Below, one piece after another: positions 1,438 through 34,205 of a stretch of 64,000 nt of DNA (position 1 is its first letter; every line of letters begins with the position of its first letter). The stretch spans positions 1 through 64,000 of IMG/VR virus record IMGVR_UViG_3300032236_001850, one strand, 5' to 3'. Position numbers and translations under genes: made by a program. The notes under the pieces were generated by a model, which was given only the letters and a program-made list of their open reading frames with translations, had not been told where the DNA came from and ran no database searches.

Positions 1438-1441
1438 TTTA

Positions 1442-1789: not shown

Positions 1790-1811
1790 GTTTTGTTTTG
1801 TTTTGTTTGTT

Positions 1812-2015: not shown

Positions 2016-2017
2016 AA

Positions 2018-2350: not shown

Positions 2351-2358
2351 CTTAATTG

Positions 2359-4293: not shown

Positions 4294-4318
4294 GTTATGT
4301 TTTGTTTTGTTTTTTGGT

Positions 4319-8624: not shown

Positions 8625-9003
8625 TGTGTTTAGCTTTTAATTTTGGTAAATCAAACTCCAATGGAATTTTATTTTTTCTTAATTCTGTCATAAATCTAGC
8701 AACAACATCTTTAGCTGATGCTTTTGGGTGTGGTTCGACAGCTGGCTTATCTCTTCTAATTGGACTAGGTCTTTGAGGGGTTTTACCTGGAGCTGTACCT
8801 GGTTTGATTGTTGGTGCAGGCTTAGAAGGAGCTTCTTGAGCTGCTTTTGGATGTGGCTCGACAGCTGGCTTATCTCTTCTTATCGGACTAGGTCTTTGAG
8901 GGGTTTTACCTGGAGCTGTACCTGGCTTAGTTCCAGGTGCAGGTTTACTTGGTGCCTTCTGAGGACCATTCGATAAAAACTCGTCGATTTTTGTATAAAT
9001 CAT
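8617..9003 (-). CDS. Pro/Lys-rich protein with 41-aa internal duplication
   Basis: Start reassigned to MIYTKIDEFL (9003), downstream of the GATATATA motif. Confidence 0.75.
   Translation of the reverse strand: MIYTKIDEFLSNGPQKAPSKPAPGTKPGTAPGKTPQRPSPIRRDKPAVEPHPKAAQEAPSKPAPTIKPGTAPGKTPQRPSPIRRDKPAVEPHPKASAKDVVARFMTELRKNKIPLEFDLPKLKAKHND
8719..8964. repeat. Two-copy 123-nt coding direct repeat
   Basis: APSKPAPxxKPGTAPGKTPQRPSPIRRDKPAVEPHPKA twice. Confidence 0.9.
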
Positions 9004-15738: not shown

Positions 15739-17180
15739 TGACCACAAAGAAAAAGAAAAAACCAATAGTTGATATAGACGTTCTAAACTCGGATCAGAGG
15801 GAAGCTTTTGAAGAGTTGAGAGATTTTATATGCGACAGGGATGACGAAAATGTTTATGTTCTTAAGGGTTGGGCAGGTACAGGTAAAACCTTTTGTATAA
15901 GCGTTCTCGTTAGATACATTTTGGAAGTGGTGCATCCTAAAAGCGCTTGGTATAAAATAGCTGTAACTGGACCTACTAATAAATCGGTTAGAGTTATAAA
16001 GAAGACAAGCAATCTAAGAAATCCTAGAGTTACTTTCCAAACAATACACAAGCTTCTTGGTTTAACCGAGAAGATAACCAATGATGGGCAGCAAGTTTTT
16101 GTCAACCAGGAGAAGAACTTCAAACCACAGATCAACTCTGTGAAGCTTCTAATCATAGACGAGGTTTCCATGCTTAATGATGATCTTTTTCATGAGATCC
16201 TTAAATATCGGGACAAGCTAAAGATTATCTGCATGGGTGATCCAGCACAGATACCACCAGTGGGTAAACCTGACTGTATCCCGTTCAGAGACGAGTTAGC
16301 TGATCCTTATGGTATTAAAACTCTTCAACTCAAAAAGATAATGAGACAGAAAGAGGGTAATGCCATCATAGATTCCTCTGTGCTTATTCGTGAAGATCTT
16401 TGGTCTGAAAGAAATCCAGTTAAGCCTGTTACCTCTCTAAATTCACTTGGCGAGGGTGTGGAATTTTTAAATCTTAATGATGGGGAGACAAGGAAGGGCT
16501 TCGGTGATATTCTTGCCAAATATTTCAGATCAGAAGAATTTAAGGATGATTCTGAGTACTGCAAGATTATAGCATGGAGAAATAAAACGGTTTCCAGCAT
16601 GAATAATCTTGTTAGAAGAATCATATTCGGAGAGGATGAATGTAGATCTAAGATACTCGTTGGTGAAAAGTTAATTGCAAATTCTCCGGTTATAATTCAG
16701 GGGAATCTGATACTATTTAATACCAATGATGAATTTTCTGTTGAGTCTACCAAGATAAGGGAGATGAACATGGTTCTAAAAACATTCTCCCCCGTTATAG
16801 AAGTGAAACTAAAGTTCTATGATGCCGTGGTTAGCTATCTTAATGACGAGGATGAGATTGAGAAGACCTCAATAGAAATACTACATGAGGATAGTGAAGC
16901 CGAATTTTCCAAAATTGCAAACCTACTTAAACTGAAGGCAATAGAAAAGAAGGGCAGGGATAGAAGCTGGATAGATTACTACGATTTTATGAGAAACTTT
17001 GCTGATGTTAGCTTTGCATATGCAATAACAGCACACAAAAGCCAAGGGAGCACTTATAACACAACATTTGTACTGGAAGATGATATAGATGTAAACATCA
17101 ACGTTGTTGAAAGAAACAGAATCAAATATACTGCCTACACAAGATCAAGTAAAAAGGTTTACATATTGAAAAGATTTTAA
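15738..17180 (+). CDS. dda: SF1B DNA helicase (Dda/RecD-like)
   Basis: GWAGTGKT, IIDEVSM, MGDPAQIPPV, YAITAHKSQGST; start at MTTKK. Confidence 0.85.
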   Translation: MTTKKKKKPIVDIDVLNSDQREAFEELRDFICDRDDENVYVLKGWAGTGKTFCISVLVRYILEVVHPKSAWYKIAVTGPTNKSVRVIKKTSNLRNPRVTFQTIHKLLGLTEKITNDGQQVFVNQEKNFKPQINSVKLLIIDEVSMLNDDLFHEILKYRDKLKIICMGDPAQIPPVGKPDCIPFRDELADPYGIKTLQLKKIMRQKEGNAIIDSSVLIREDLWSERNPVKPVTSLNSLGEGVEFLNLNDGETRKGFGDILAKYFRSEEFKDDSEYCKIIAWRNKTVSSMNNLVRRIIFGEDECRSKILVGEKLIANSPVIIQGNLILFNTNDEFSVESTKIREMNMVLKTFSPVIEVKLKFYDAVVSYLNDEDEIEKTSIEILHEDSEAEFSKIANLLKLKAIEKKGRDRSWIDYYDFMRNFADVSFAYAITAHKSQGSTYNTTFVLEDDIDVNINVVERNRIKYTAYTRSSKKVYILKRF

Positions 17181-18379
17181 ATAAGCCCTTGATTTAGTTT
17201 CCTTCCAATATTAACAGTTTGTCTAGTTACACCAATTTTTTTCATTATTCTATCTTGCATTTCTTGGAATCCATCGATCTTGTATAATTCTAGCGGATTC
17301 TTTTTGTAGAAATCACAAATTTTATCAAAATATTTTCTATGAAAATCATCAAGGCTTACATTATCTATATAATCTCGTATTAGGTCACTATAAATATTTG
17401 GTAAAATTGATGATAAATCAGTCATACCAAATATGGTATTAACATGTTCTAAAAATCTTAAAGAAAGAACATTGCCCCAACTACCATACCTGTCACACGT
17501 TATTTTGGTTATAGATAGGAGATTGTCAATAATGCATTTTTTTATAATGTCAACAACCTCCTCTGAAGTTGATTTGTTGGATATCTGTAAAAGAATGGTC
17601 CCGTTACTTCTCCTTGTAATGCTTGTTTTTTTTCCATAAACGTATTCGACGGTAATCCAGCTATGTAAGGCGCTATGAAAGTTATTCATAAACACATTTA
17701 AAATAAAATGATCATCCTCCTCTTCCTCGTTTATGGCAAATAAATTTTTTAATATAGCATCCCTAAGACCGCTATGCAGCGTGGGTGAGATAGTATATCT
17801 TTTATTCCCCAAAGTAAGTAGTTGATTATTTATTAATATTTGACTTTTTTTACCATGTTCATTAAAAGTGGCGTGGTACCCAAGATCTACCGAGAATTTG
17901 TTACATATATCTGCTATTTCCCTTAAATCTGCAGGTTCTGTAATTCCAGAATTTTGTTTTATGATTGATTCTATTTCACTTTTGGATTTACCAAGGATCC
18001 TTTTAATTCCTATTTCTTCTATTTTTTTAATAAGATTTTCCTTTTTTATCCCATTGATTGCTACCATTTTTGATATAAGATATAGGTATAAGCTATTTAA
18101 ACATTCGTTTAGAGATGGAAATGCTCTGTCAACAAAAGTATTTCCCTGGGATACGCATTTATATGCATACCCACCATCACCGGTTGGATAAAGCATTGTC
18201 TTGGAGCCGACACCATTCATATGAATAAAACCGCTGGATTTTACATCGAATGTTATGAATCCTGGTTGTTTAAGTGCCATTATTCCATTCATCGTTTCAT
18301 TTCTTCCCAATTCTCTGGTTAGCTCGGCAGCTTGTTCTTTCTTGCTTGCCTCGAATAATCTGAAGTTTAATATTTTCAT
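17177..18379 (-). CDS. Hypothetical protein with capsid-targeting-like leader
   Basis: MKILNFRLFE/A; GATATATAG just upstream. Confidence 0.8.
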   Translation of the reverse strand: MKILNFRLFEASKKEQAAELTRELGRNETMNGIMALKQPGFITFDVKSSGFIHMNGVGSKTMLYPTGDGGYAYKCVSQGNTFVDRAFPSLNECLNSLYLYLISKMVAINGIKKENLIKKIEEIGIKRILGKSKSEIESIIKQNSGITEPADLREIADICNKFSVDLGYHATFNEHGKKSQILINNQLLTLGNKRYTISPTLHSGLRDAILKNLFAINEEEEDDHFILNVFMNNFHSALHSWITVEYVYGKKTSITRRSNGTILLQISNKSTSEEVVDIIKKCIIDNLLSITKITCDRYGSWGNVLSLRFLEHVNTIFGMTDLSSILPNIYSDLIRDYIDNVSLDDFHRKYFDKICDFYKKNPLELYKIDGFQEMQDRIMKKIGVTRQTVNIGRKLNQGLI

Positions 18380-19149: not shown

Positions 19150-19632
19150 ATGAAGAATTTTTTCTATCTTTTTCTGACAATCTTTATTGTCTCGTGTGTG
19201 GGTAATCACCACAAAAAACACAATGGTGAAACCTATGCAACTACAGATCGACCTGGATATTGCTATCATGGCAATGATGGCCTTTGGTATCTGTACTACC
19301 TAAATTCTACCGGTAATGGTTACACTTATGCTGGTACAGCCCAAAACTTTACAAGTTACAACTCATCAGAGACTGTTAGCTGGTCTCCAACAGCAGAGAA
19401 TGTAACAAATTTTGAATCTGTTCCTGAAGGAGTAGCGGAATCTATGACAGAAGCAACGGGTGAAACGACAGGTGGAACTGAAGCTACTGAAGGTGCAGAT
19501 GGAAGCATGTCGGAAGCTGATGGAAGTTCTGAAGGTGGATCTGATGGTGATTCAGGTTCTAGCAGTTCAGATTCAGGATCCGGTGGAGGTGACTCTGGTG
19601 GAGGTGGAGACGGTGGAGGTGGCGGAGAATAG
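19150..19632 (+). CDS. Lipoprotein with Gly/Ser/Glu-rich tail
   Basis: MKNFFYLFLTIFIVSC lipobox. Confidence 0.75.
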   Translation: MKNFFYLFLTIFIVSCVGNHHKKHNGETYATTDRPGYCYHGNDGLWYLYYLNSTGNGYTYAGTAQNFTSYNSSETVSWSPTAENVTNFESVPEGVAESMTEATGETTGGTEATEGADGSMSEADGSSEGGSDGDSGSSSSDSGSGGGDSGGGGDGGGGGE

Positions 19633-19642
19633 CCATAAAAAC

Positions 19643-19676
19643 ATAAAAAACCCAATCTGATGATTGGGTTTTTTAT
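19643..19676. terminator. Bidirectional intrinsic terminator
   Basis: ATAAAAAACCCAATC-TGAT-GATTGGGTTTTTTAT between convergent genes. Confidence 0.9.
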
Positions 19677-20644
19677 TAATCGTCAAATTCTGTTAATGCT
19701 CCGACTGGGGCAAATATTATTTTACCAAATGGTGGTTTATTGTACATTTGTGGTGAACATATAAACCAAATGACCTTATTCACATATTTTTTAATATTGA
19801 ATTGACTTTCTTTTGGCATTTCACCACCAGTATCCGTTAAATAAATAAAAACCGAGGGGTTTATTTTTTCATCTTCAACGTATTTGAAAGGAGGTAGAAA
19901 TCCACAATCGTTACCCCCTGTGGTTGCCCATTTGGAAAGATCCGGAAGTTGACCTCTTTTAATATTTACTTTATCAACATTATCTATTTGATCGCTACAG
20001 TATATAATATAAAGTGTATCGCACTTAAACTTTTTTGCTAAAAAGACAACCTCGTTAATAAAGGTCTTTGATTGGTTTTCCGATATCGAACCTGAAGTAT
20101 CGACTGCAGCAACTATTGTTTTCAATGTTTCCACTCCGCTTCTTTTCTGTCCATATATTGCTGTTCCTCCGGCTATAAATCTTCTATTTGGAAAAACCCA
20201 ATCCATTTTATTTACCGCCTTGTCAAAGAATCTTTTTAATTCTCCTTTCCAATCAACTAGAGCTGTTGTTCCTATTGAAGAATCAAGCATGGATCTTATG
20301 CTATCTGTTACTGCTCCCCCGTTAGTTGAAAGAGCCGATGCTGTTATTTTTCCCCAATCCGGCATTTTTATTTTTTTGTCGTAGGTTGTTGATTTTTTAT
20401 CTCCCTTATATTCTTTAGCATCAGTTTTTATAAGCTTTCCCTTGTTAGCAACATCGTTTGTTGTCGCAGCAGAATCACTTCCCTTACCAGTTGCTTTTGG
20501 AATATCTGACATAATATTGGGATTTTCTGAGAATTCAACATTCCCAATTTCCCCTTCCGGTTCACCATTATTGTTAACTTTTTCTCCTCCCTTTTTGGAG
20601 TCTTTTTTATTAACTACTGAATATTGACCTTTTTTTACTAACAT
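19676..20644 (-). CDS. vWA-like domain protein (DUF2201 C-terminal type)
   Basis: IVAAVDTSGSIS, GGND, FIYLTDTGG; DWK.EL.RF preceding motif. Confidence 0.8.
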   Translation of the reverse strand: MLVKKGQYSVVNKKDSKKGGEKVNNNGEPEGEIGNVEFSENPNIMSDIPKATGKGSDSAATTNDVANKGKLIKTDAKEYKGDKKSTTYDKKIKMPDWGKITASALSTNGGAVTDSIRSMLDSSIGTTALVDWKGELKRFFDKAVNKMDWVFPNRRFIAGGTAIYGQKRSGVETLKTIVAAVDTSGSISENQSKTFINEVVFLAKKFKCDTLYIIYCSDQIDNVDKVNIKRGQLPDLSKWATTGGNDCGFLPPFKYVEDEKINPSVFIYLTDTGGEMPKESQFNIKKYVNKVIWFICSPQMYNKPPFGKIIFAPVGALTEFDD

Positions 20645-20647
20645 GTT

Positions 20648-21664
20648 TTAAATTTCTATATCGCCGTTATTGTACACTTTTTTTATTGTACCACTTCCAC
20701 CTGATTTTAATACTACCTTATCGCCAACCTTAGGTAATAGTTTTCCGTTACTTTCCCCTGGTTTACCTTCTCCAGGTTTTCCTTCACCTTCTCCAGGTTC
20801 TCCGTTACCTTCCCCTTCTCCAGGTTCTCCGTTACCTTCTCCAGGTTCTCCATCACCTTCTCCAGGTTCTCCATCACCTTCTCCAGGTTCTCCATCACCT
20901 TCTTCATCTCCATCTCCATCTCCATCACCTTCTTCTGATTCTCCATCACCTTCCCCAGGTTCTCCTTCTCCAGATTCGTTATCTCCTTCCGCATCTTCCT
21001 GTTCATCTGAATCGTTTTTTCCCTCTTGTACTTGAAGATCTTCATTTGCTTCCGGTGTTTTCTCCTCTGGATCGTTAACTTCGCCCATCGCTGCCTGCAT
21101 CATAAGCTGATCTATTCTATTCATTGCTCCATCCTCTAAGAGTAGCTGGTAAATATCTTCAGCTCTCATACCAGCATATTTTCTTTCGTATAATCCAGCT
21201 TCCTTACCGCCCATTATTGGTTTTTTCCATTTACCGTTTATGAAATTGTCGTCGTGAATTAATAGCGGGTTTATTGCATAATCACAAGCAACGTTCCATA
21301 ATCTTGGATCTCTATTCTCTCTTCTTATATTATGCTGAAACATACAATGAAGAACCTCATGTGCAAGAACAAATCTTAGTGCTTCATCCGATTGATCCTG
21401 CACAAATTTTGGATGGAATATAATGGAAATTCCATTTGTGCACATTGTTGGTGGATCTATTTTATCTGAACCATAGATATCCAAATGCGCCAGCAATCTT
21501 CCGTAAAGATTTGCATTAAGATTAAGCCATAAAATGGCTCGCTTCATCTTTTTGTTTATCTCCTCAGAATCATAGGATTCCGACTCGTTTATGGCTTTAA
21601 TGTAAACATTAAAGCTAGTTATAGCCTTTCCTATGCCGGATCTAGTTTCTAATAATCTTTCCAT
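20648..21664 (-). CDS. Putative HExxH metallopeptidase (DUF2201_N type) with acidic repeat linker
   Basis: TMCTNG, FVLAHEVLHCMFQH, WNVACDYAIN; C-terminal KVGDKVVLKSGG small beta-barrel. Confidence 0.8.
   Translation of the reverse strand: MERLLETRSGIGKAITSFNVYIKAINESESYDSEEINKKMKRAILWLNLNANLYGRLLAHLDIYGSDKIDPPTMCTNGISIIFHPKFVQDQSDEALRFVLAHEVLHCMFQHNIRRENRDPRLWNVACDYAINPLLIHDDNFINGKWKKPIMGGKEAGLYERKYAGMRAEDIYQLLLEDGAMNRIDQLMMQAAMGEVNDPEEKTPEANEDLQVQEGKNDSDEQEDAEGDNESGEGEPGEGDGESEEGDGDGDGDEEGDGEPGEGDGEPGEGDGEPGEGNGEPGEGEGNGEPGEGEGKPGEGKPGESNGKLLPKVGDKVVLKSGGSGTIKKVYNNGDIEI
20755..20965. repeat. Coding tandem repeat, about 21-nt unit (G[DN]GEPGE)
   Basis: Directly visible; TTCTCCAGGTTCTCCATCACC units. 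Confidence 0.9.
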
Positions 21665-21669
21665 GGATA

Positions 21670-23166
21670 TTATATGTGTCCACTTGATTTTAATTTCCCC
21701 GTTAATAGAACAACAGCATCTCTTTTTGGACCTTCTTTATCTGTTGGAAGCGGTGTAAATTCTGGGAATTTACCAAGTATTAATGTTTTGTACATCCAGG
21801 ATAAAACTTCATTTTCATCATATCTAGAAATGTATTTTAATGCATTGTAAATTTTAGTAGGATCATACTCCTCTATTCTACCAAGTAGTAATGTTGCTAT
21901 ACCGTAAAGAACTGCGATGTCTGTCTTTGCTTTCATTACCAATGGAACATCGTCTGGATCTTCTAATATTCTATCAAGATCACTTTCCGGTATTTCTTTA
22001 AGAACTTTAAGGTAGTCTACGAAATCTGTTGCTCCTTCTATACCAACGGATGGTGAGAATATGTCAAATATTTGATCCATTGGAAGTTGTCTCCAGTTTT
22101 TCAAACCTTTAATTTTTAATTTACCAGCTAATTTAAGTGCTCCATCGGTCCAAGATCTAGGTGATGGATAAACTTTACCTTGATCTGGATCATTCTTATG
22201 AAATAAATGTTTCTTTCTCATAATGAATGCAGGTAATTCTGGTAATATTTTACTGTGTCCTACTGCAAATTCTTCCCATTCTTCTGGTTTAGGCACAAAG
22301 TTATAAACATCAAATCTATTTGCAAGAGCTGTCGACATTGGGTGGATATCAGCATCCGGGTCATCCTCTTGTCTGTTACCAGCTCCAACTATAATCCATT
22401 TATCAGGTAATTGGTAATCACCAATTCTGCCAGCTTGTACGAATTTAAGAAGCACATTATAGATTGGACCTTGAGCTCTGTTCATCTCATCAAGGAATAC
22501 TATACCACCTTTTCCATTCTCACCGTTATCTCTTGGTAATATAGATGGCGGGTTATCTCTGGTAAATCCTGAACCTGGATCGATAATAGCACCATTTTTA
22601 ACAACAGATGGTGTTATCTCGTGCTGTGATGGTATACCTCTAAAATCCTCAGGCAACATTGTTTCCAAATCTAGGAATAGGAAATTACATCCTATTTTGG
22701 AAGCTGCTTCAACCACAATTTCAGTTTTACCAATACCTGGTGCACCGTACATAAAAATAGGTTTTGCTCTTTCTCCTGCAACTTTTAATTCATATAGATC
22801 AATGATTTGGTTTTGTAGAAATTTACCTGATTTATCTATCGGGTTACCAGATTTAACTCCCCCTGGCCAACCAGTTCCAACCACAGCCTCATCTAGAGAT
22901 TCAGTAATACCAACTTCTCCAAAGAAATTTCTAAATTGGTCCAGAATAGGTCCATTCTCAGGCACAAATAACATGGCTCCAGGAAGTCCTTTTTTAGGAC
23001 CTCTTTTAATTTTTCTAATTTTATCATTTGCAAGAAGCTCAAAGAAATCCTTTGTCCATCCTGTGAATTTATCTATAACATTTGCTTTTAACCAGCTAAA
23101 AAGTCCTTCGTTGACCATGTATGATTCATTAACATAATCCTGAAAATTAAAAATTCTTTTTTTCAT
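21670..23166 (-). CDS. MoxR-family AAA+ ATPase with capsid-targeting-like leader
   Basis: GAPGIGKT, FLDEMNRA, ALANRF; N-term MKKRIFNFQDYVNE/S..VNE/G. Confidence 0.88.
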   Translation of the reverse strand: MKKRIFNFQDYVNESYMVNEGLFSWLKANVIDKFTGWTKDFFELLANDKIRKIKRGPKKGLPGAMLFVPENGPILDQFRNFFGEVGITESLDEAVVGTGWPGGVKSGNPIDKSGKFLQNQIIDLYELKVAGERAKPIFMYGAPGIGKTEIVVEAASKIGCNFLFLDLETMLPEDFRGIPSQHEITPSVVKNGAIIDPGSGFTRDNPPSILPRDNGENGKGGIVFLDEMNRAQGPIYNVLLKFVQAGRIGDYQLPDKWIIVGAGNRQEDDPDADIHPMSTALANRFDVYNFVPKPEEWEEFAVGHSKILPELPAFIMRKKHLFHKNDPDQGKVYPSPRSWTDGALKLAGKLKIKGLKNWRQLPMDQIFDIFSPSVGIEGATDFVDYLKVLKEIPESDLDRILEDPDDVPLVMKAKTDIAVLYGIATLLLGRIEEYDPTKIYNALKYISRYDENEVLSWMYKTLILGKFPEFTPLPTDKEGPKRDAVVLLTGKLKSSGHI

Positions 23167-23190: not shown

Positions 23191-23198
23191 TATATATC
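23191..23198 (-). promoter_or_regulatory. GATATATA putative late promoter (MoxR operon)
   Basis: Recurrent motif. Confidence 0.65.
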
Positions 23199-23258: not shown

Positions 23259-23726
23259 ATGGATAAAGATCTAGCTGAAGCGGAAGCAAGAGTTCTAAAT
23301 TATATAAGAACAACCAAGGAATATTCTGAAATGAATTTCCAGGATAATAACAGTAAAATATGGGTTGCCCATAATTCGCTGATTGCCGCTGCCAAAATAT
23401 ACATCATCGACAATTATAAATTGATTGACGATTACACTGATCTTGATCTTATATTGAGAAGTGGAGCAACAGGCGGGAGGTTTTATTTTGGGCCAAAAAG
23501 AAACAGGGAGGTTTCTAGATCAAAGGAGTTAACCAGAATTTTAAAAGAACTGGATAACCAAACAATAGTTATAGAAAGCTTCGATGAAGCTATCTATGAC
23601 TGGACAGATGGGGATTTTTCAGTGGTGTTCAATGGTGAATCATACAATTGGATAGACGATGATTCAGTTATAAGTATAGCGTCTTACATAGAAAAAAAAT
23701 TAGAGGAAAATGAAATACAATATTGA
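23259..23726 (+). CDS. Hypothetical protein
   Basis: Start reassigned to MDKDLAE. Confidence 0.7.
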   Translation: MDKDLAEAEARVLNYIRTTKEYSEMNFQDNNSKIWVAHNSLIAAAKIYIIDNYKLIDDYTDLDLILRSGATGGRFYFGPKRNREVSRSKELTRILKELDNQTIVIESFDEAIYDWTDGDFSVVFNGESYNWIDDDSVISIASYIEKKLEENEIQY

Positions 23727-24828
23727 GGAAGTTAACGAATATGTGGCTAAGGGATTGGTTGATAAATGTGAGCATAAAGAACTCCCGATAGCAATCTATA
23801 AATATTCACGTAATTGTCAGTTCGAATGGATCTGGGATAACATCACGATGAATATGAGAGGTACCGTTCTCGATGAGAATGGAAACCTTATAGCCCGTAC
23901 ATTTCCTAAGTTTTTCAATATTGACGAGGGGAACATACCAAATTTACCATTTGAAGTTTTCGAAAAACTTGATGGTTCACTTGGTGTCCTATTCAACTAT
24001 GAGGGAGAATGGCATCTGGCAACACAAGGTTCATTCTATTCTGATATTGCTATTTATGCACAGGAGATATTGAAACGAAACGAAACTTATAAGGATGTGT
24101 TCTCTGAGAAATTTACTTTCCTTTTTGAAATCATATACCCAAAGAATCGAATAGTTTGTTCATATGGTGATGATGAGAAATTGGTGCTTCTTGCTGCTTT
24201 CAATACTAAATCAGGTAGAGAGGTTCCTTATCAGGAATTAAAGGACGTTGCGGAAAGAACTGGATTTGAATGTGCTAAAAGATATGATGGGATCAAGGAT
24301 CTTAAAAAGATAAAATCACTAATCGGTGATAATCAGGAGGGATTTGTTATAAGATTCTCTGATGGAACTAGAGTAAAAGCAAAGGGGGAGGAATATGTAA
24401 GGCTTCATGGGGTTCTGACATCGTTCTCCAACTTAGATATCTGGAGATGCTTAAAAGAGGGAAGCGATTATAGATCTTTAATGGTTGATGTTCCTGATGA
24501 ATATGATGCATGGGTTACAAACATTGAACAGGATCTCCAATCTAATTTTAATTTTATAGAGGCAACGGTAAAGGCCGAATATAAATTATTAGTAAAGAAA
24601 CTTAAAAGTCAAATCCCGACGGAGGAGGAAAGACAAGATCGAAACTCACCAGTACTTAAGGCATACAATAAGGAATTCTTTGAGCTTGTGGAAGGAAACA
24701 GATTAGCTGGGTATTTATTAGATCATCACAGAAATAAGGACTATTCAGGATCAATCTGGAATCAAATAAGGCCGGATTACGAAAAACCATTTTGGACAGA
24801 TTACTCATTAAAAAGAAATAAACCATGA
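23710..24828 (+). CDS. RNA ligase, T4 Rnl1-like
   Basis: Motif I EKLDGSLG, FEIIYPKNRIV, EGFVIRF, RVKAK. Confidence 0.88.
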   Translation: MKYNIEEVNEYVAKGLVDKCEHKELPIAIYKYSRNCQFEWIWDNITMNMRGTVLDENGNLIARTFPKFFNIDEGNIPNLPFEVFEKLDGSLGVLFNYEGEWHLATQGSFYSDIAIYAQEILKRNETYKDVFSEKFTFLFEIIYPKNRIVCSYGDDEKLVLLAAFNTKSGREVPYQELKDVAERTGFECAKRYDGIKDLKKIKSLIGDNQEGFVIRFSDGTRVKAKGEEYVRLHGVLTSFSNLDIWRCLKEGSDYRSLMVDVPDEYDAWVTNIEQDLQSNFNFIEATVKAEYKLLVKKLKSQIPTEEERQDRNSPVLKAYNKEFFELVEGNRLAGYLLDHHRNKDYSGSIWNQIRPDYEKPFWTDYSLKRNKP

Positions 24829-25347: not shown

Positions 25348-25748
25348 TGATTAAAGAACAAGAAATAGAAAAAGCAAAATTAGAGTTTGCAATAGAGCAA
25401 TTGGAGCAACATATAGTTCATCCAATGAAACCCGGTTATAGAAGACATGACGTCATGGATAAGATCAAGGAATTAAAATCCCAGCTTAAGTCCATTACTG
25501 ATTCCGAGAGTAAAGAAATCATCATATTAATCCAAACCGATGGATCTTGCGAGATGGCAAGGGTATCAATGGATGGTGTTGGTGTGATGGAAGGCAACTT
25601 TTGGGATTTTCACCCAGGGTGTCACAATATAAATGAATATGGTGACTTTGGAAACTGTGATGATTTAGCAATAAAGATATTGCTTAAGCTCACAAAGGAA
25701 GGTAAAAAAGCCAAGATAATTAAGGAAAAATATAAATACGAATACTAA
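25347..25748 (+). CDS. Hypothetical protein
   Basis: TAATG-coupled. Confidence 0.7.
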   Translation: MIKEQEIEKAKLEFAIEQLEQHIVHPMKPGYRRHDVMDKIKELKSQLKSITDSESKEIIILIQTDGSCEMARVSMDGVGVMEGNFWDFHPGCHNINEYGDFGNCDDLAIKILLKLTKEGKKAKIIKEKYKYEY

Positions 25749-26395
25749 TGAAAATAATATTACAAGGACATCAGAAGATCTTCTGGACATCTGATTCCCA
25801 CTATAACCACTCCAACATATGTAGTGCTACTAGCGAATGGCCTGCAGGAAGAGGAACTCGGAAATTCAATTCATTGAATGAAATGAACGACCGACTAGTA
25901 TACGAGATCAATGCAATGGTAGGAGAGAATGATATACTAATCCACCTGGGAGATTGGAGCTTTGGTGGCATAGAATCTATCTCGGAGTTTCGAAATAGAA
26001 TTAACTGTAAAAACGTACACATCTTCTTAGGGAACCACGATCATCACATAAAAAACAACAGGGATAATGTGAGAGATCTTTTTGCTAGTGTCAATAAGCT
26101 GGAAACTATAGAGCTTCGAGTTCCACAAGGAAAGGAAACTAAGAAATACACATTTGAATGCTGTCATTTCCCAATAGCTAGTTGGGATGGACTTGGCAAG
26201 GGATATTCACATTTGCATGGACACGTTCATCTTCCTGGTAACTTAAAGATACACAAGGGAAGAGCAATGGATGTTGGTGCAGACGGAAACAACTACAAGC
26301 CATATTCATTGAATGAAATATTGAAGGCATTGGAGGGAAGACCTAAGATGCACTTATCATTACCAAAGGATCATCACACTGAGGAGGGGGACTAA
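25748..26395 (+). CDS. Calcineurin-like metallophosphoesterase
   Basis: SDSHYNH, HLGDWS, GNHD, HGHVH. Confidence 0.9.
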   Translation: MKIILQGHQKIFWTSDSHYNHSNICSATSEWPAGRGTRKFNSLNEMNDRLVYEINAMVGENDILIHLGDWSFGGIESISEFRNRINCKNVHIFLGNHDHHIKNNRDNVRDLFASVNKLETIELRVPQGKETKKYTFECCHFPIASWDGLGKGYSHLHGHVHLPGNLKIHKGRAMDVGADGNNYKPYSLNEILKALEGRPKMHLSLPKDHHTEEGD

Positions 26396-26396: not shown

Positions 26397-26783
26397 ATGA
26401 AAACTTTATATCTATTGAGAGGATTACCAGGATCTGGTAAAACAACACTAGCTAAAAATATTGGCGGAGTTCACTATGAAGCCGACCAATATTTTGAGGC
26501 TAATGCTGGTGTACATTTCGATGGATATCAGTTGCAAAATGCCCATAATTACTGTAGAGAAAATGTAATTGGTGCTATGGAGTTGGGTGAACCTAGCATC
26601 ATAGTTTCCAATACTTTGACTAGAAAAAAAGAGGTCGAAGAATACATGGAACTCGGTGAAAAATATGGCTATAGAGTTTTCTCACTGGTTGTTGAAAATC
26701 GCCACGGTGGTGAAAATTCACACGATGTTGGTGAAGCAACATTAAACAAAATGAAAAACAGATTTGATTTAAAATTAATGTGA
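26397..26783 (+). CDS. P-loop kinase (AAA_33/PNK-kinase-like)
   Basis: LLRGLPGSGKTT, EADQYF, VSNT. Confidence 0.85.
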   Translation: MKTLYLLRGLPGSGKTTLAKNIGGVHYEADQYFEANAGVHFDGYQLQNAHNYCRENVIGAMELGEPSIIVSNTLTRKKEVEEYMELGEKYGYRVFSLVVENRHGGENSHDVGEATLNKMKNRFDLKLM

Positions 26784-29891: not shown

Positions 29892-30623
29892 ATGCTTAAA
29901 CACATAAAGGAATATGAGGAATACGATCCCTCACTGGAAAAACTAAACGAGGGTCTGGGAGATCTTTGGGAGAGATTTAAAAAAGCTGTTAGTGACTTTT
30001 TCAGCAGAAAGAAAACTGTTGTGGTGAAGAAGCCGGGAGCTAAAGTTATGGATCCAAGTCTTATAACGGGGGAACATATGATATATTTAACACATCAGCA
30101 AGGACCAACTGGACTTGCTAATATCTTAGATATACTTAGAGGCGATGCTAAAATTGAGGACAACTCAAGAAATAAGCTGCTTAATAATATGCCACAGTCA
30201 GATCCAAGATACCAAAAAGTTCAGACAGGCAAAAGCAAACAAGCAGTCAAGGCATTTTTAGAATATCAAAAATCCACTTGGGATGAATATAAAAAAGAGG
30301 CTTTAACCAAAATTAATGATCCTCAGAATGCCAAGGTTAAACAAGCCATAGAGAAGGCTAAGGCTAAGATACCGGATTTCACTAAAGATTTTATAACAAC
30401 AGTGGCTTATAAGGAATCAAGATTTGATCCTAATCCAAAAACAAATAAGGCATATAGAGGTTTATTTCAGATAGGTGATAGTGCTTGGGCTGAACTTAAA
30501 AGAGTTTATCCAATGAAATATAAAGGTGCTAAAGCTCCTCTTGCACCAATCAAGAACACGGAAGCTGGGTGTGATTATTTAAAATTGGTTTATGATAGAT
30601 TTGAGAATCTAATTAAGCATTAA
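29892..30623 (+). CDS. Lytic transglycosylase (SLT)-like protein with capsid-targeting-like leader
   Basis: VAYKESRFDP...YRGLFQI; N-term MLKHIKEYEEY..KLNE/G. Confidence 0.7.
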   Translation: MLKHIKEYEEYDPSLEKLNEGLGDLWERFKKAVSDFFSRKKTVVVKKPGAKVMDPSLITGEHMIYLTHQQGPTGLANILDILRGDAKIEDNSRNKLLNNMPQSDPRYQKVQTGKSKQAVKAFLEYQKSTWDEYKKEALTKINDPQNAKVKQAIEKAKAKIPDFTKDFITTVAYKESRFDPNPKTNKAYRGLFQIGDSAWAELKRVYPMKYKGAKAPLAPIKNTEAGCDYLKLVYDRFENLIKH

Positions 30624-31239
30624 ACCTCTCACAGAATTTATAAAAGTTTCTAAAAGGTATACCATCAGTCCAGCTTTTTTCTGGATGAAACTGCAAACCA
30701 AAAACTCCAATATCTAGATTTTCGAATCCTGCTATTGGAGTTTCTTTTGTTTCTGCTATTAGTCTACACCCTCTAGGTAGTGAAGCTAACATATATGAAT
30801 GTGCCATGAAAACCATCTGGTCTTCCGTTATATCTAGGCCTTCAAATAGGATGCTAGGGTAGAGGTGTGCAATAACCTCGGAATATTCACCAATACTGTC
30901 GTTGCAATTAATTATCTCCGAACCAAGATAGGAACCAAGTTCCTCATTACCATAACAAAGTCCAAGTTTAGGTAATTTTGATTCGAATATTTTGGAGGAT
31001 GTTCTTATTGACGTGTCTCTAGATCCTGAAATTATAATACCAAAACATTCTGATAATTTGGAATCTAATAATTCATCCAAATTTGGATCATCGTATGCTA
31101 CTGCGACAAAAGGAATTCTGTTAGCTCTTAGTTGTATCTCAACGTCAAGGTGAGGTGCATTCATATGCATCACCAGAAGTTTATTATTTACCCAAGATTT
31201 GAAGGGCTTGACTCTATTTAAAGCTAAATTACTTTCCAT
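30613..31239 (-). CDS. Class I glutamine amidotransferase (GMP-synthase GAT-like)
   Basis: GIIISGS, LGLCYG, GLQFHPE (Cys-His-Glu triad). Confidence 0.85.
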   Translation of the reverse strand: MESNLALNRVKPFKSWVNNKLLVMHMNAPHLDVEIQLRANRIPFVAVAYDDPNLDELLDSKLSECFGIIISGSRDTSIRTSSKIFESKLPKLGLCYGNEELGSYLGSEIINCNDSIGEYSEVIAHLYPSILFEGLDITEDQMVFMAHSYMLASLPRGCRLIAETKETPIAGFENLDIGVFGLQFHPEKSWTDGIPFRNFYKFCERFNA

Positions 31240-31256
31240 CCGTTTTATTTTTGGCT

Positions 31257-32756
31257 CTATTTGGCCCTTTTGTTAAATTCTCCCATCATTTCCTCTCTGT
31301 CTGCTATAAGCTCTCTCATTCTTGTCAAACTCTGAATAAAACTAGGATCAAGTCCATTGGTATCTTCATAATCATCAATAAGTGATTCCATGCTTTCCCA
31401 TCCTCCTATAGAGGTCTCTTTGATTTCATCAATTTCAGATTTTGTGTAATCCTTACCTATAATTGCATCAAATACTCTCCATCCTGCAATTGTATAAATC
31501 CCTTGACCTATAAACCAATCCATAAAATCTGATTTTGGTATTTTCTTATTGTTGTAGATTATCTCTGAAACCGTTCCAGCAATCTTATTCCAGATACCCT
31601 CCGGCATTTCACCTGCAAGATCACCTTTACTTGCACCTAATAATGCCTCAATTATTTGATCTTTGTTTTTACTTTTGTATAACTGTGAAAGTGACTTCTT
31701 TATTGCAAATTCTGAATCTAGTGAATCTACTATGGTGTCAACTAAGGATTTTGGATAACCCAATTTGGTAAAATGTTCCTCTGGTGAATTGCTTTTTTTA
31801 ATGTTTACATCGTTTATATCATGTGAATCTGTAACAGATCCAGCAAATGATACGGTGTTACCAGTTAGAAAAAGAGGATCTGCTGGATCTATTCCAAAAT
31901 TAAATATATTAATCTGTAGACCCTTGGAAGAATACCCTTCGAATGAACCCCTATTGATACACCAGTTTGCAACGGCGCATAATTTTTTCTGTGCGTCTTC
32001 GGTTCGGATTGTCATTACTAAATATTTATCGTCAGAGTAAATAATACCTGCTTCAGGCTCAAGACTTTCAAGTTCATCAATTTTCTTTTTCATCCCAAGA
32101 TTTGAAAACCCACCAATGTAATTTGATATGTATTGAATCACATCGTCAATTTTCCATCTCTCCATGGATTTTATTTTTTCAAAAAGACGATCTATAGCAG
32201 ATTTACCAAGTTCTTGTAATTGAACTGCCATGGTGATTACTTTTTTCTGTTTTTCTGTATCCAATGAACGATATTGATCTCTTAATCCCTTAGGTAGCGA
32301 ATTTACAAACCATTTAGATTCTTTTTCTCTCTCTATAGTTCTAATTTCGTCGGTCAACTGTTCAAATCCGCTTATTCCCTCTCCTCTTTCTTCATTAGCA
32401 AATTTTTCAATAGGTTTACTCAATTGTTGAACTATATACTTCTTAGTTGTTATCGTGTCAAGTAATTGCTTTAATGATCTTACCTCCTCAGTATCTGTGG
32501 AAAGAGCCACAGGTATACCCTGATCAAAGTGAAATTTCACAAAAGGTAAAACGTATCCAGGATGATTTTTCAAAAGATTCATTATTGCCTGGTAAGATCC
32601 ATTTTTCAATGCTTCTTCCTTTTCTTCGGGAGTTAGTTGATTAGTTTCTTTTTTGTGTATTTTTGCATATCTTTTTTGCATATAAGCCTTTGCAGCAGAT
32701 ATGTTCTCATTTAAACTCCAATCTACAAAGGATTCAAATATATAGGATTTTCTCAT
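31257..32756 (-). CDS. Hypothetical protein, paralog of 9061..10725, capsid-targeting-like leader
   Basis: MRKSYIFESFVDWSLNE/N; shared blocks. Confidence 0.85.
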   Translation of the reverse strand: MRKSYIFESFVDWSLNENISAAKAYMQKRYAKIHKKETNQLTPEEKEEALKNGSYQAIMNLLKNHPGYVLPFVKFHFDQGIPVALSTDTEEVRSLKQLLDTITTKKYIVQQLSKPIEKFANEERGEGISGFEQLTDEIRTIEREKESKWFVNSLPKGLRDQYRSLDTEKQKKVITMAVQLQELGKSAIDRLFEKIKSMERWKIDDVIQYISNYIGGFSNLGMKKKIDELESLEPEAGIIYSDDKYLVMTIRTEDAQKKLCAVANWCINRGSFEGYSSKGLQINIFNFGIDPADPLFLTGNTVSFAGSVTDSHDINDVNIKKSNSPEEHFTKLGYPKSLVDTIVDSLDSEFAIKKSLSQLYKSKNKDQIIEALLGASKGDLAGEMPEGIWNKIAGTVSEIIYNNKKIPKSDFMDWFIGQGIYTIAGWRVFDAIIGKDYTKSEIDEIKETSIGGWESMESLIDDYEDTNGLDPSFIQSLTRMRELIADREEMMGEFNKRAK

Positions 32757-32762
32757 AATTTT

Positions 32763-33332
32763 TTATTTCTTTTTCTTAGCTGCTTTTGCTTTTTTAGCTT
32801 GTTTATAAAGAGCTCCATCGCTAACTTCGGTTGTTCTACCTCCAACTATGAAGGAATTAACTCTAGCAAATCCCCACTGTTCAGGATTTGTTCCAGGCAC
32901 GTGTCCTTTTTTCCATGCTGCATAACCCCGATCGAAAATTTTTCTTAATATACCAAGAGGAAATCCAGATTTTTTAGCTTTATTTTTTAAAGCAACAGAA
33001 ACTTTAGAATCCTCAAATAGAGACTCTTCGTTGTTAAGTTCTTCAAACACTTCGAAAGCTGCCCACTCGATTTCGGAATTAAATTTCTCAATCGGCACTA
33101 TATTTCTAGCTGTATCAAAATCCTCACTCTCCCCGTACATCTCCTTGAATTTCTTGGTGTACTTACTTGGCTTTGTTGGTACTTTTTTACCCTTACCTGC
33201 TTTACCACTTTTGTAGTCTGCATCCCAAGGACCGTATGCTGAATCATCATTATCAGCTTTGTTTCCATGTTTTTTGATTTCTCTTTTCATTATGTCCGGA
33301 TTTGTTGTTAGGTATTTCTTTGGGTATTTCAT
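32763..33332 (-). CDS. Basic hypothetical viral protein
   Basis: C-term LKNKAKKSG..LRKIFDRG.AAW..GH.PG...QWGFARVNSF, recalled as a conserved viral domain of unknown function. Confidence 0.7.
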   Translation of the reverse strand: MKYPKKYLTTNPDIMKREIKKHGNKADNDDSAYGPWDADYKSGKAGKGKKVPTKPSKYTKKFKEMYGESEDFDTARNIVPIEKFNSEIEWAAFEVFEELNNEESLFEDSKVSVALKNKAKKSGFPLGILRKIFDRGYAAWKKGHVPGTNPEQWGFARVNSFIVGGRTTEVSDGALYKQAKKAKAAKKKK

Positions 33333-33338
33333 ATGAAT

Positions 33339-34205
33339 TTATGCTTTGATTATTTTATGATATTGGCCGTAGTTATTTATTGCCCATCTAACAACTATAT
33401 TTAGATCAGGATTGCCGAATAATATTTTTCCATTTTTCCCGCATATTATATATCTAAATGGATCATTTTTAAATTCTATGAGTATTATATCTTTAGCATC
33501 CCTCCCATTAAAAATCACTTGGTGCTCCTTATCCTTTTCGTGCCAAACTCTAATTCCAGAAGCTCTAAACAGTACTGCATAATTTCCATATCTATGTTGG
33601 TATCCGTATGCTGTAGGATATAAATAATGCTTGGGAAAGTCATCAATAGTAAATCCAAAATTATAGCCTCCCTCCACTTTATCAGAAGCTGGCAAGCCTC
33701 TTGTACATGCCAAGTCATCTATATTTTTAGCTCCGAGTTTGAATCCGGATTTGCTAATTTCTTTAGCGGCATTACTAAAATGTATGAGCCATTGATTTTT
33801 AAGTATTTCTGGTGATTTAAACCACCTCCAGGAGGGATATTTGTTTGGCCTTATGGGTAGAGTTTCTTTCTCTATTTTATCATATAGGTATTCTGCAAAT
33901 TTATCGTAGGTTTTCTTATCGTTTTTTTCTAACCAAGATATTATTTTATTTTCTCCGGCCTCCCTTGGACCTTCAAATTTATACCCAGTATCTAAAACAA
34001 AATCGTTAAAAAGGTGTGAATATTTATACGGGAGTGGATTCTTCTTCGAAGCCTTTGAAGATTTAAGATATTCGTTAAATTTTATTAATTCATTTGTTAA
34101 AAATTCATTTATTATTCGAGATCCAGTAAAACTCTTAAGAGTATCTGAACCCGTAAATTCTTTAAACAATTTAAGTGATTTCATGGTTGTTATATTTTTA
34201 TCCAA
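33339..34205 (-). CDS. Hypothetical protein with repeated targeting-like motifs
   Basis: MKSLKLFKEF..IINEF..LIKFNEYL; alternative start 34184. Confidence 0.75.
   Translation of the reverse strand: MDKNITTMKSLKLFKEFTGSDTLKSFTGSRIINEFLTNELIKFNEYLKSSKASKKNPLPYKYSHLFNDFVLDTGYKFEGPREAGENKIISWLEKNDKKTYDKFAEYLYDKIEKETLPIRPNKYPSWRWFKSPEILKNQWLIHFSNAAKEISKSGFKLGAKNIDDLACTRGLPASDKVEGGYNFGFTIDDFPKHYLYPTAYGYQHRYGNYAVLFRASGIRVWHEKDKEHQVIFNGRDAKDIILIEFKNDPFRYIICGKNGKILFGNPDLNIVVRWAINNYGQYHKIIKA

What the first reader, a model, noticed from the sequence alone, without database searches (positions are those of the whole stretch)
19676..23166. MoxR ATPase - HExxH peptidase - vWA triad in a late operon, with two members tagged for packaging
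Seen: three adjacent minus-strand genes. The peptidase-like and vWA-like parts, which I recall as usually fused (DUF2201_N + DUF2201), are separate ORFs 3 nt apart. The peptidase has an acidic GEPGE repeat linker and a small C-terminal beta-barrel. ATPase and peptidase have capsid-targeting-like leaders. Known: MoxR ATPases use vWA adaptors to remodel client proteins. Inference: a virion-delivered unfoldase/protease machine that could inactivate host defence proteins right after injection, or chaperone head assembly.
Basis: partly seen in the sequence, partly recalled or inferred. Interest (0 to 1): 0.7.

Follow-up and report, generated by a model that had tools for sequence, protein, structure and literature searches.

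The report
Late-gene MoxR ATPase with split peptidase–vWA partner
A 434-kb freshwater phage carries a late-gene operon for a protein-remodelling ATPase and a zinc protease/adaptor that has been naturally split into two re-associating halves, and two of the three proteins carry T4-like "put me in the capsid" leaders, so the machine may travel inside the virus particle.

Summary
Three minus-strand genes, 23166→19676, encode:
- a MoxR-class AAA+ ATPase;
- a DUF2201_N HExxH peptidase with a 21-nt-repeat acidic linker and a small C-terminal β-domain;
- a DUF2201 vWA protein with an intact MIDAS motif.

The peptidase/vWA split is real and old. Here the two ORFs are in the same frame, separated by TAA plus one codon. 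More than 100 related protein clusters are also split, three relatives have the ORFs in different frames, and other pond metagenomes keep the stop. A complex prediction has the halves re-associating.

The "late operon" reading is supported. A GATATATA motif precedes the sheath, portal and head-protease/capsid genes, this operon, and its orthologues in relatives.

The "packaging tag" reading is supported for the ATPase and is weaker for the peptidase. About 47 unrelated proteins share an MKxIKxFExF…[LIV]NE↓ leader that resembles the T4 capsid-targeting sequence. The genome encodes a T4-type prohead protease.

The MoxR + peptidase–vWA pair is already described for jumbo phages (Iyer et al. 2021). 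New here are the split with its predicted clasp and the predicted capsid targeting. Packaging and the clients are untested. Interest 0.6.

The parts
23191..23198 (-). GATATATA, candidate late promoter. It starts 32 nt upstream of the ATPase ATG. The predicted transcription start is the A at 23186.
   Evidence: 92 copies in the genome, 68 of them within 70 nt upstream of a same-strand ORF (4 expected). It precedes the sheath, portal, head-protease/MCP, Hc2 and tail-fibre genes. It is conserved upstream of the ATPase orthologues in L051, L052 and L053.
21670..23166 (-). MoxR-class AAA+ ATPase, 498 aa. Walker A G141-T148; Walker B D226-E227 within DEMNRA; N264; R284 within ANRF.
   Evidence: Pfam AAA_5 and phrog_1297; invariant columns; AF2 model with pLDDT 80, with top PDB matches NorQ and CbbQ2.
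23107..23166 (-). ATPase leader/propeptide candidate, residues 1-20: MKKRIFNFQDYVNE|SYMVNE|G.
   Evidence: PSSM 12.6. Conserved in 119 orthologues down to 37% identity. E20 is at least 90% conserved. Disordered in the model.
20648..21664 (-). DUF2201_N zinc peptidase, 338 aa. This is the N-terminal half of a protein that is normally fused.
   Evidence: Pfam PF13203 at 85.7 bits, profile positions 4-155 of 271. H102, E103, H106, H111 and D128 are conserved. AF2 core pLDDT is about 90.
21584..21622 (-). Leader-like segment of the peptidase, residues 15-27: ITSFNVYIKAINE|S.
   Evidence: Carries the N-terminally enriched [LIV]NE[SAGD] motif. F18 and E27 are at least 90% conserved. The motif is present at variable offset in orthologues and at the extreme N-terminus of fused relatives.
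21332..21361 (-). HEVLHCMFQH, the zinc-binding motif (residues 102-111).
20765..20924 (-). Acidic GDGEPGE linker, a tandem repeat with a 21-nt unit and 7.5 copies.
   Evidence: TRF. Disordered in the model, residues 226-307. Length differs between strains only by multiples of 3 nt.
20651..20737 (-). C-terminal KOW-like mini beta-domain, residues 310-338.
   Evidence: pLDDT of about 90. Precomputed PF00467 hits in orthologues. Predicted to pair with the first 11 residues of the vWA protein.
20645..20650 (-). Junction: TAA stop (20648-20650) plus an AAC spacer, in frame with the next ATG.
   Evidence: Unchanged in contigs from three other studies.
19676..20644 (-). vWA protein, 322 aa. This is the C-terminal half of the split protein.
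   Evidence: Pfam PF09967 at 44.9 bits plus the PF13203 tail. MIDAS residues D182, S184, S186, T270 and D271 are invariant.
20612..20644 (-). Clasp strand MLVKKGQYSVV, residues 1-11.
   Evidence: Conserved as M[LI][VI]KKG[QDN][YF]x[VI][VI] in standalone vWA homologues. Contacts peptidase residues 315-338 with about 1 A expected error.
20162..20371 (-). Helical tail of DUF2201_N, encoded in the vWA ORF (residues 92-161).
   Evidence: Pfam profile positions 202-258. Predicted to pack on the peptidase core at residues 52-61, 107-113, 130-137 and 164-168.
19715..20116 (-). vWA-like domain (residues 177-310), with the DTSGS MIDAS motif at 20087-20101.
19643..19676 (.). Bidirectional intrinsic terminator (15-bp stem followed by a T run) that ends the operon.
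   Evidence: sequence.

Best explanation
This is a self-contained late operon (promoter-like GATATATA, three genes, terminator) in a T4-like-headed 434-kb phage. It encodes a MoxR-class AAA+ ATPase and a DUF2201 zinc-peptidase/vWA co-factor.

In this lineage the co-factor gene underwent fission inside its disordered linker. The two polypeptides are predicted to re-form the ancestral protein in two ways. The KOW-like C-terminal mini-domain of the peptidase is augmented by the first 11 residues of the vWA protein. The DUF2201_N tail helices, now encoded in the vWA ORF, pack back onto the peptidase core.

The working model is inferred from NorQ-NorD, CbbQ-CbbO and RavA-ViaA. The vWA MIDAS site grips an acidic residue of a client protein, the MoxR hexamer engages the vWA partner and remodels the client with ATP, and the tethered HExxH peptidase cuts it.

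The ATPase, and probably the peptidase, carry N-terminal propeptides of the genome-wide MKxIKxFExF...[LIV]NE| type, which resembles the T4 capsid-targeting sequence. I therefore infer that they are recruited into the prohead core and trimmed after Glu by the phage's S77 (gp21-like) protease. The leaderless vWA half would ride along through the clasp.

What the machine does once in the head is unresolved. It may act during head maturation, or it may be ejected with the DNA to act on host proteins at time zero, as T4 Alt and IPI* do.

Shown: gene identities, the conserved split, motif statistics, and the predicted interaction. Inferred: late timing, packaging, cleavage, and the clients.
For: Identity:
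- Pfam and PHROG hits.
- ATPase motifs are invariant.
- The best PDB matches of the ATPase fold are NorQ (in NorQ-NorD vWA complexes) and CbbQ2, TM by target 0.58-0.66.
- HExxH and MIDAS residues are invariant.

Split:
- 114 of the 120 best clusters are 213-370 aa with DUF2201_N only, many with KOW as well.
- Three relatives have three ORFs with 8-, 2- and 17-nt gaps, the peptidase and vWA ORFs in different frames.
- The stop is unchanged in strains from three other studies, and all indels there are multiples of 3 nt.
- Fused relatives with 51-53% identity in the vWA part exist.

Re-association:
- ipSAE is 0.63 against a best control of 0.43. That mark was reached by 58 of 80 solved complexes and 2 of 110 mismatched pairs. 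Runs agree in at least 44% of contacts, and the partner's pLDDT is at least 62.

Late timing:
- GATATATA statistics and the genes it precedes.
- A gp55-like sigma factor.
- The motif is conserved before the ATPase orthologues.
- All five minus-strand islands in the window start with it, while plus-strand runs carry TAnnTTTG.

Packaging:
- The leader PSSM reaches 8 or more in 47 of 538 N-termini against 42 of 121,356 internal positions.
- The 47 leader proteins fall into 40 unrelated clusters.
- Leader and GATATATA co-occur: 26/47 against 41/491, p = 4.5e-14.
- [LIV]NE[SAGD] is 5.2-fold enriched in the first 30 residues and occurs in the ATPase (twice), the peptidase, and before the mature part of the MCP.
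- An S77 protease and a Gp23-type MCP are present.
- The T4 CTS is MKTYQEFIAE, and cleavage follows Glu (PMC8442874; PMC5694885).
- The leader is absent from the PA5oct, phage G and N4-like homologues, so it is a lineage-specific addition.

Precedents:
- The MoxR ATPase p618 of ATV is a major virion component that binds a vWA protein (PMC4124505).
- The PA5oct homologue of the ATPase carries the record's ESI-MS/MS note.
Against: - There is no expression, proteomic or cleavage data for this uncultured phage, and no RNA run was listed.
- The peptidase leader is internal and not significant by PSSM (3.5). The vWA protein has no leader.
- GATATATA is assigned to 'late' only by the company it keeps.
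- The resemblance to the T4 CTS is a resemblance of pattern, not homology.
- In N4-like phages the fused pair sits among middle and replication genes. It has no leader there, so the core function does not need packaging.
- PA5oct's virion mass spectrometry list includes '7 virion-unrelated enzymes', so that detection may be carry-over.
- The complex prediction passes the mark only at the +0.20 margin, and it used my own alignments.
Confidence: 0.5

Rival explanations
1. Late cytoplasmic virion-assembly chaperone that is not packaged. The MoxR-vWA-peptidase set folds, assembles or trims structural proteins in the infected cell, as Iyer et al. proposed for the fused pair in group 2.2 jumbo phages. 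The N-terminal leader has another role, such as recruitment to the assembly site, the membrane or the outside of the scaffold, or regulated turnover.
For: - The published proposal (PMC7824862).
- Late-type promoter shared with structural genes.
- The homologues in PA5oct, phage G and N4-likes have no leader yet are retained, so a packaging-independent function exists.
- The vWA half has no leader.
Against: - The leader is shared by about 47 otherwise unrelated and mostly unannotatable proteins, and it ends in the same [LIV]NE| motif that precedes the mature MCP. This is the pattern of T4 head-internal proteins, not of assembly chaperones.
- Major structural late genes (sheath, portal, tail fibre) lack the leader.
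Confidence: 0.3
2. Intracellular host-takeover or replication-support enzyme, as in N4-like phages. It is made and used in the same cell. GATATATA is a general phage promoter, or a middle plus late one, rather than strictly late. The leader is a translation or stability element of such transcripts.
For: - In N4-like Pokken the ATPase (N4 gp24-like) and the fused peptidase-vWA lie between RNAP II and dCTP deaminase.
- In this window the operon lies among Dda helicase and RNA-repair genes.
- 16 GATATATA genes have the motif about 12 nt from the ATG, implying leaderless mRNAs whose 5' coding sequence could be constrained.
Against: - The operon is its own oppositely oriented unit. Its promoter type differs from that of its neighbours, which carry TACTTTTG.
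- Late structural genes with GATATATA do not need the leader.
- The leader is conserved at the protein level across orthologues at 37-50% identity.
- Leader genes almost never carry TAnnTTTG: 1 of 47.
Confidence: 0.12
3. Decaying gene or artefact. A fused DUF2201 gene was hit by a nonsense mutation or an assembly error, or the stop is read through or recoded.
For: - The two ORFs are in the same frame, separated by one TAA and one codon.
- The assembler's contigs break in the nearby repeat.
Against: - More than 100 clusters share the same C-terminus (...NGDIEI) and the same vWA start (MLVKKG...).
- In three relatives the ORFs are in different frames.
- The stop is unchanged in three other studies.
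- None of the 31 tRNAs is a suppressor.
- Catalytic and MIDAS residues are intact.
Confidence: 0.02

Closest known systems
MoxR AAA+ ATPase + metallopeptidase-vWA pair of group 2.2 (T4-like) jumbo phages (Iyer et al. 2021, PMC7824862). Examples: PA5oct EST35_0335/0340, Bacillus phage G gp576, N4 gp24 and the adjacent gene.
   Same: The same three domains (AAA_5/MoxR, DUF2201_N, DUF2201) in the same gene order. The ATPase is 27% identical to the PA5oct ATPase. The same PHROGs, 1297 and 1314.
   Different: - There the peptidase and vWA form one protein of about 380-400 aa. Here they are two ORFs, with an inserted acidic repeat and a KOW-like clasp.
- Here the ATPase has a roughly 130-aa N-terminal extension.
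- Here both the ATPase and the peptidase have CTS-like leaders that those homologues lack.
Acidianus two-tailed virus p618 (MoxR) / p892 (vWA)
   Same: A virus-encoded MoxR ATPase that binds a vWA partner. p618 is a major virion component (PMC4124505).
   Different: An archaeal spindle virus with no peptidase domain and no T4-type head or propeptide. Sequence relatedness to it was not tested here.
NorQ-NorD and CbbQ-CbbO (cellular MoxR-vWA remodelling pairs)
   Same: They are the best structural matches of the ATPase model (9qh8, 6l1q). A vWA/MIDAS partner is encoded next door.
   Different: About 15% identity. The cellular partners have no peptidase, and their clients are metalloenzymes (NOR, Rubisco). 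The client here is unknown.
T4 internal proteins IPI-III and Alt, with their capsid-targeting sequence
   Same: A short N-terminal M-K-x-hydrophobic-x-x-F amphipathic leader ending in (L/I/V)-x-Glu. A gp21/S77-type protease in the same genome. Late expression. Many unrelated, fast-evolving cargo proteins share the leader.
   Different: - The consensus differs: MKxIKxFExF...[LIV]NE against MKTYQEFIAE.
- There are about 47 carriers here, against a handful in T4.
- Function as a targeting signal is untested here.

Membership tests
MoxR-class AAA+ ATPase (Pfam AAA_5 / AAA_3) | Pfam model above the curated cut-off | tested here: met
   AAA_5 scores 31.3 bits against 22. The narrower AAA_3 (17.1 against 27) and bpMoxR (20.8 against 27) are below cut-off for this protein. 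Both are listed as precomputed hits for many orthologues.
MoxR-class AAA+ ATPase (Pfam AAA_5 / AAA_3) | Walker A GxxGxGKT, Walker B in hhhhDE(I/M)NRA, sensor-1 Asn, and Arg in the (D/N)RF motif | tested here: met
   G141-T148, D226 E227 N229 R230, N264 and R284 are invariant in 37 orthologues. The roles of these residues are assigned by analogy.
MoxR-class AAA+ ATPase (Pfam AAA_5 / AAA_3) | The fold is closest to solved MoxR proteins | tested here: met
   The top Foldseek PDB hits are NorQ and CbbQ2, E about 4e-7 to 1e-6, TM by target 0.58-0.66, ahead of FtsH, dynein and RuvB.
MoxR-class AAA+ ATPase (Pfam AAA_5 / AAA_3) | Genomic linkage to a vWA/MIDAS partner | tested here: met
   They share an operon here and in L051, L052, L053 and L003.
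MoxR-class AAA+ ATPase (Pfam AAA_5 / AAA_3) | Hexamer formation and ATPase activity stimulated by the vWA partner | not testable with these tools
This needs biochemistry.
DUF2201_N putative metallopeptidase (PF13203) | Full-length match to the domain model | tested here: inconclusive
   The peptidase ORF matches only profile positions 4-155 of 271 (85.7 bits). Positions 202-258 are in the next ORF (18 bits, below the 23.2 cut-off). The domain is complete only across the two polypeptides.
DUF2201_N putative metallopeptidase (PF13203) | HExxH zinc site conserved | tested here: met
   E103 at least 90% conserved, H106 and H111 invariant, H102 at least 90% conserved, D128 invariant.
DUF2201_N putative metallopeptidase (PF13203) | Zincin fold | tested here: inconclusive
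   Only weak matches: selecase/minigluzincins at E 0.014 with TM 0.42-0.47 by target, and TM_0929, a fused DUF2201 protein, at E 3.8e-5. No solved structure of the family was found by sequence.
DUF2201 vWA-like domain (PF09967) | Pfam model above cut-off, and a MIDAS motif DxSxS...T...D | tested here: met
   44.9 bits against 26.4. D182, S184, S186, T270 and D271 are invariant in 28 homologues.
KOW domain (PF00467) | Pfam match at the C-terminus of the peptidase | tested here: inconclusive
   No hit for this protein at E of 0.1 or less. Many orthologues have precomputed PF00467 hits. The model shows a confident small beta-domain.
T4-type capsid-targeting propeptide | A short N-terminal leader shared by unrelated late proteins | tested here: met
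   47 of 538 N-termini against 42 of 121,356 internal positions. The carriers form 40 unrelated clusters. Association with GATATATA has p = 4.5e-14. The ATPase scores 12.6.
T4-type capsid-targeting propeptide | The leader ends in (L/I/V)-x-Glu, and a gp21/S77 prohead protease is present | tested here: met
   ATPase YVNE14 and MVNE20; peptidase AINE27. The motif is 5.2-fold enriched at N-termini. The S77 protease is ORF 296799-298763.
T4-type capsid-targeting propeptide | The leader is sufficient for incorporation into proheads and is removed there | not testable with these tools
   This needs virion proteomics or an in vitro cleavage assay.
T4-type late transcription unit | A -10-only promoter shared with structural genes, and a gp55-like sigma factor | tested here: inconclusive
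   The motif is GATATATA, not T4's TATAAATA. It precedes the structural genes. There is a weak gp55 match, E 3e-5. Timing itself was not measured.

The most novel reading that the evidence does not exclude
This clade of freshwater megaphages loads a complete AAA+ remodelling machine into the capsid through a T4-like targeting leader: a MoxR ATPase with a two-piece peptidase/vWA adaptor. Some 45 other leader-tagged proteins go in with it. The phage ejects the machine with the DNA, so that host proteins, for example defence proteins, are unfolded and cut before any phage gene is expressed.
Probability: 0.25. Interest if true: 0.85.

Novelty: new variant of a known kind. Interest (0 to 1): 0.6.

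Why it matters
The function of the widespread phage MoxR + peptidase-vWA pair (N4 gp24-like ATPase and its neighbour; jumbo-phage homologues) is unknown.

This lineage offers two handles:
- A natural fission of the co-factor, with a predicted strand-swap clasp. This defines domain boundaries and a testable interface.
- Leaders that predict where the proteins go.

If the leader is a working capsid-targeting signal, the genome lists about 47 candidate head-internal or ejected proteins of an uncultured 434-kb phage. It would also add an ATP-driven remodelling machine to the known kinds of virion cargo. The leader plus the [LIV]NE| site could also serve as a packaging tag for engineering in this phage group.

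Tried and rejected
- Frameshift or sequencing error: rejected. The ORFs are in the same frame, the split is conserved, and the stop is kept in other studies.
- Stop-codon recoding or suppression: rejected. None of the 31 tRNAs is a suppressor, and the stop is TAA.
- Programmed read-through producing a fused form: unlikely. In three relatives the ORFs are in different frames.
- Known anti-phage defence system: no meaningful PADLOC hit.
- NCBIfam: nothing useful.
- DNA-level relatives among deposited phages: none.
- PDB by sequence: only P-loop-level matches for the ATPase, a marginal match for the peptidase, and none for the vWA protein.
- Pfam on ten large leader-bearing proteins: no family.
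- PHROGs on genes flanking the MCP: uninformative.
- RNA runs to map the transcription start: none was listed.
- PA5oct supplementary tables, to see how its ATPase was classed: not held.
It was rebuilt without them.

Full report
**Setting.** The window is the first 64 kb of a 434,509-bp IMG/VR virus record with direct terminal repeats. GC content is about 35%. The genome has 31 tRNAs and no suppressor. Near-identical sequence occurs in pond, freshwater and viral metagenomes from several studies. The genome has a T4-type head module:
- an S77 (gp21-like) head maturation protease in ORF 296799-298763;
- a Gp23-type major capsid protein at 298781-300505;
- a portal protein and a tail sheath;
- a weak gp55-like late sigma factor at 281677-281955 (E 3e-5).

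**The observation.** The three minus-strand ORFs are as described.
- The 498-aa protein matches AAA_5 above cut-off and phrog_1297 at 5.5e-49.
- The 338-aa protein matches DUF2201_N (E 5e-24), but only profile positions 4-155 of 271.
- The 322-aa protein matches DUF2201 (vWA-like) and also holds the missing DUF2201_N tail, profile positions 202-258.
- Both of the latter hit the same PHROG end to end.

Fused versions are the rule elsewhere. Examples are Bacillus phage G gp576, PA5oct gp340, N4-like Pokken gp32, Thermotoga TM_0929, and an uncultured 462-kb phage.

The junction reads ATT TAA AAC ATG. The ORFs are therefore 3 nt apart and in the same frame. The acidic linker is a 21-nt tandem repeat. 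The C-terminal 29 residues form a confident small beta-domain that Pfam calls KOW in many orthologues.

**Is the split real?** Yes.
- Of the 120 best protein clusters found with the peptidase, 114 are 213-370 aa with DUF2201_N only. They end in the same ...VYPNGDIEI motif.
- Three relatives fetched with context have ATPase, peptidase and vWA as three ORFs. The gaps are 8, 2 and 17 nt, and there the two ORFs lie in different frames. The in-frame arrangement here is therefore incidental, and read-through is not the design.
- Standalone vWA homologues nearly all begin M[LI][VI]KKG[QDN][YF]x[VI][VI].
- Contigs of related strains from three other studies keep the stop. They differ in the repeat only by multiples of 3 nt.
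- Fused relatives exist whose vWA part is 51-53% identical. They lack the KOW module. Fission and clasp therefore arose together within this phage group.

**Do the halves re-associate?** A complex prediction scored ipSAE 0.63 against a best control of 0.43. That mark was reached by 58 of 80 solved complexes and 2 of 110 mismatched pairs. The runs agree in at least 44% of contacts, and the partner's pLDDT is at least 62. The interface has two parts:
- Peptidase residues 311-338 pair with vWA residues 1-11, a strand augmentation of the mini-domain, with about 1 A expected error.
- The peptidase core around the zinc helix (residues 52-61, 107-113, 130-137, 164-168) packs against vWA-ORF residues 92-124, which are the DUF2201_N tail.

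This supports binding but does not demonstrate it. The margin over the controls is exactly at the threshold.

**The ATPase.** Walker A, DEMNRA, N264 and ANRF are invariant. The AF2 model (pLDDT 80) has a disordered leader (residues 1-22), a small N-domain, a disordered linker (85-109), and then the AAA+ and lid/helical domains. Its best PDB matches are NorQ, in NorQ-NorD vWA complexes, and CbbQ2. Both are MoxR proteins that work with vWA partners.

**The peptidase and the vWA domain.** The zinc motif and the MIDAS residues are conserved. No solved structure of DUF2201_N exists. The fold search gives only weak zincin matches: selecase, BlaR1, and Spartan-type proteases.

**Late operon?** One 8-mer, GATATATA, is 13-fold enriched upstream of ORFs. 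Of 92 copies in the genome, 68 lie within 70 nt upstream of a same-strand start, where 4 are expected. It precedes the tail sheath, portal, head closure, tail-fibre-like and head protease (then MCP) genes. It also lies 32 nt upstream of the ATPase ATG.

An A four nt after the motif is conserved in 59 of 68 sites. In 16 genes the motif lies 12-14 nt before the ATG; at 12 nt (14 genes) that A is the A of the ATG itself, which implies a fixed transcription start and leaderless mRNAs.

The motif is also present 29-40 nt upstream of the ATPase orthologues in three relatives. In the window, each of the five minus-strand islands begins with GATATATA. The plus-strand runs carry a Bacteroidota-type TAnnTTTG instead, including TACTTTTG for the divergent RNA-ligase unit.

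The operon ends in a strong terminator. "Late" is thus a well-supported inference, not a measurement.

**Packaging tags?** A PSSM built from obvious cases (MKxIKxFExF...) reaches 8 or more in 47 of 538 predicted N-termini, against 42 of 121,356 internal positions.
- The carriers fall into 40 unrelated clusters once the first 25 residues are removed.
- 26 of the 47 have GATATATA, against 41 of the 491 others (p = 4.5e-14). Only 1 has TAnnTTTG.
- Ten large carriers match no Pfam family.
- The ATPase scores 12.6. Its leader, MxKRILDFxxFVNESY..VNEG, is conserved across 119 orthologues down to 37% identity, with E20 at least 90% conserved.
- A second signature, [LIV]NE[SAGD], is 5.2-fold enriched in the first 30 residues (p = 1.7e-8). 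It occurs twice in the ATPase, once in the peptidase (AINE27|S), and in the capsid protein before its conserved part (SLNE|SAG).
- The peptidase segment alone is not significant (score 3.5). However, F18 and E27 are at least 90% conserved, and fused relatives carry a clear leader at the very N-terminus, for example MKYLITNYYKYLKEE and MKNLISNYYYFINEN.
- The homologues in PA5oct, phage G and an N4-like phage lack any leader.

In T4, the 10-20-residue capsid-targeting sequence MKTYQEFIAE brings internal proteins and Alt into the prohead core. It is removed by gp21 after a Glu, at ITE or LTE in Alt (PMC8442874; PMC5694885). The parallel is close in pattern and context, but it is untested here.

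**What is known.** Iyer et al. 2021 (PMC7824862) described the MoxR + metallopeptidase-vWA pair in group 2.2 jumbo phages. They proposed a role in virion assembly with peptidolytic processing, citing ATV. The ATV MoxR protein p618 is a major virion component and binds the vWA protein p892 (PMC4124505). The PA5oct ATPase homologue (27% identity) carries the record's ESI-MS/MS note, though that study lists 7 "virion-unrelated enzymes" among its detections. In N4-like phages the pair lies among middle genes.

**Verdict.** The objects and the split are certain. Late transcription is likely, at about 0.75. Loading into the prohead is plausible, at about 0.5. The clients are unknown: they could be head-core proteins during maturation, or host proteins after ejection. 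Relative to the literature this is a new variant of a known pair. The fission with a predicted clasp, the added N-terminal extension, and the capsid-targeting-like leaders are the new parts.

Noticed in passing
whole genome G000; in the window e.g. 17177-18379(-), 31257-32756(-), 33339-34184(-), 45228-45950(+): About 47 otherwise unrelated proteins share an N-terminal leader MKxIKxFExF...(L/I/V)NE. They cluster at 126-140, 162-177 and 194-213 kb, and most are preceded by GATATATA. They are candidate head-internal or ejected proteins.
   Followed up: partly
window 721-5140, 7170-9003, 17177-18379, 19676-23166, 30613-34918 (all minus strand): Every minus-strand island in the window starts with GATATATA. 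The plus-strand runs carry TAnnTTTG (mostly TATATTTG), a Bacteroidota-type -7 element. This suggests strand-segregated late versus early/middle transcription and a Bacteroidota host.
   Followed up: partly
window 23710-24828, 25748-26395, 26397-26783 (+): An RNA-repair-like cassette (Rnl1-type RNA ligase, phosphoesterase, PNK-like kinase) is transcribed divergently from the triad. The same ligase-triad-helicase synteny is conserved in the relatives L051 and L053.
   Followed up: partly
window 20765-20924: The acidic linker repeat is length-polymorphic between strains (+30, +30, -6, +6, +6, +6, +21 nt), always in frame. The assembler's contigs of the source run break inside it, so the copy number in the window may not be exact.
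   Followed up: yes
window 19150-19632 (+): This ORF has a lipoprotein-like N-terminus (...IFIVSC) and a Gly/Ser/Asp-rich tail. It converges on the vWA gene and shares the bidirectional terminator at 19643-19676.
   Followed up: no
L003 5314-6789 (LR756500.1): The fused homologue in a 462-kb uncultured phage has a GQ repeat and two CxxCxGxG (DnaJ-type zinc-finger) motifs at the linker position. Its neighbours start with MKYIQTYKDFLLEA-type leaders.
   Followed up: no
G000 396321-397796: A RimK-like ATP-grasp enzyme (phrog_2599) also carries the leader (MMISKNVLDFSSFLNE|A) and GATATATA. It is a second recognisable enzyme in the leader set.
   Followed up: no
G000 298781-300505 and 300600-302937: The capsid protein N-terminus has LINE|Q, PLIE|S and SLNE|SAG. 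The unannotated genes just downstream start with leader-like sequences (MTLKFKEWDQLNE|AS, MITFNTFRLLED). This is consistent with scaffold or core proteins processed after Glu.
   Followed up: partly
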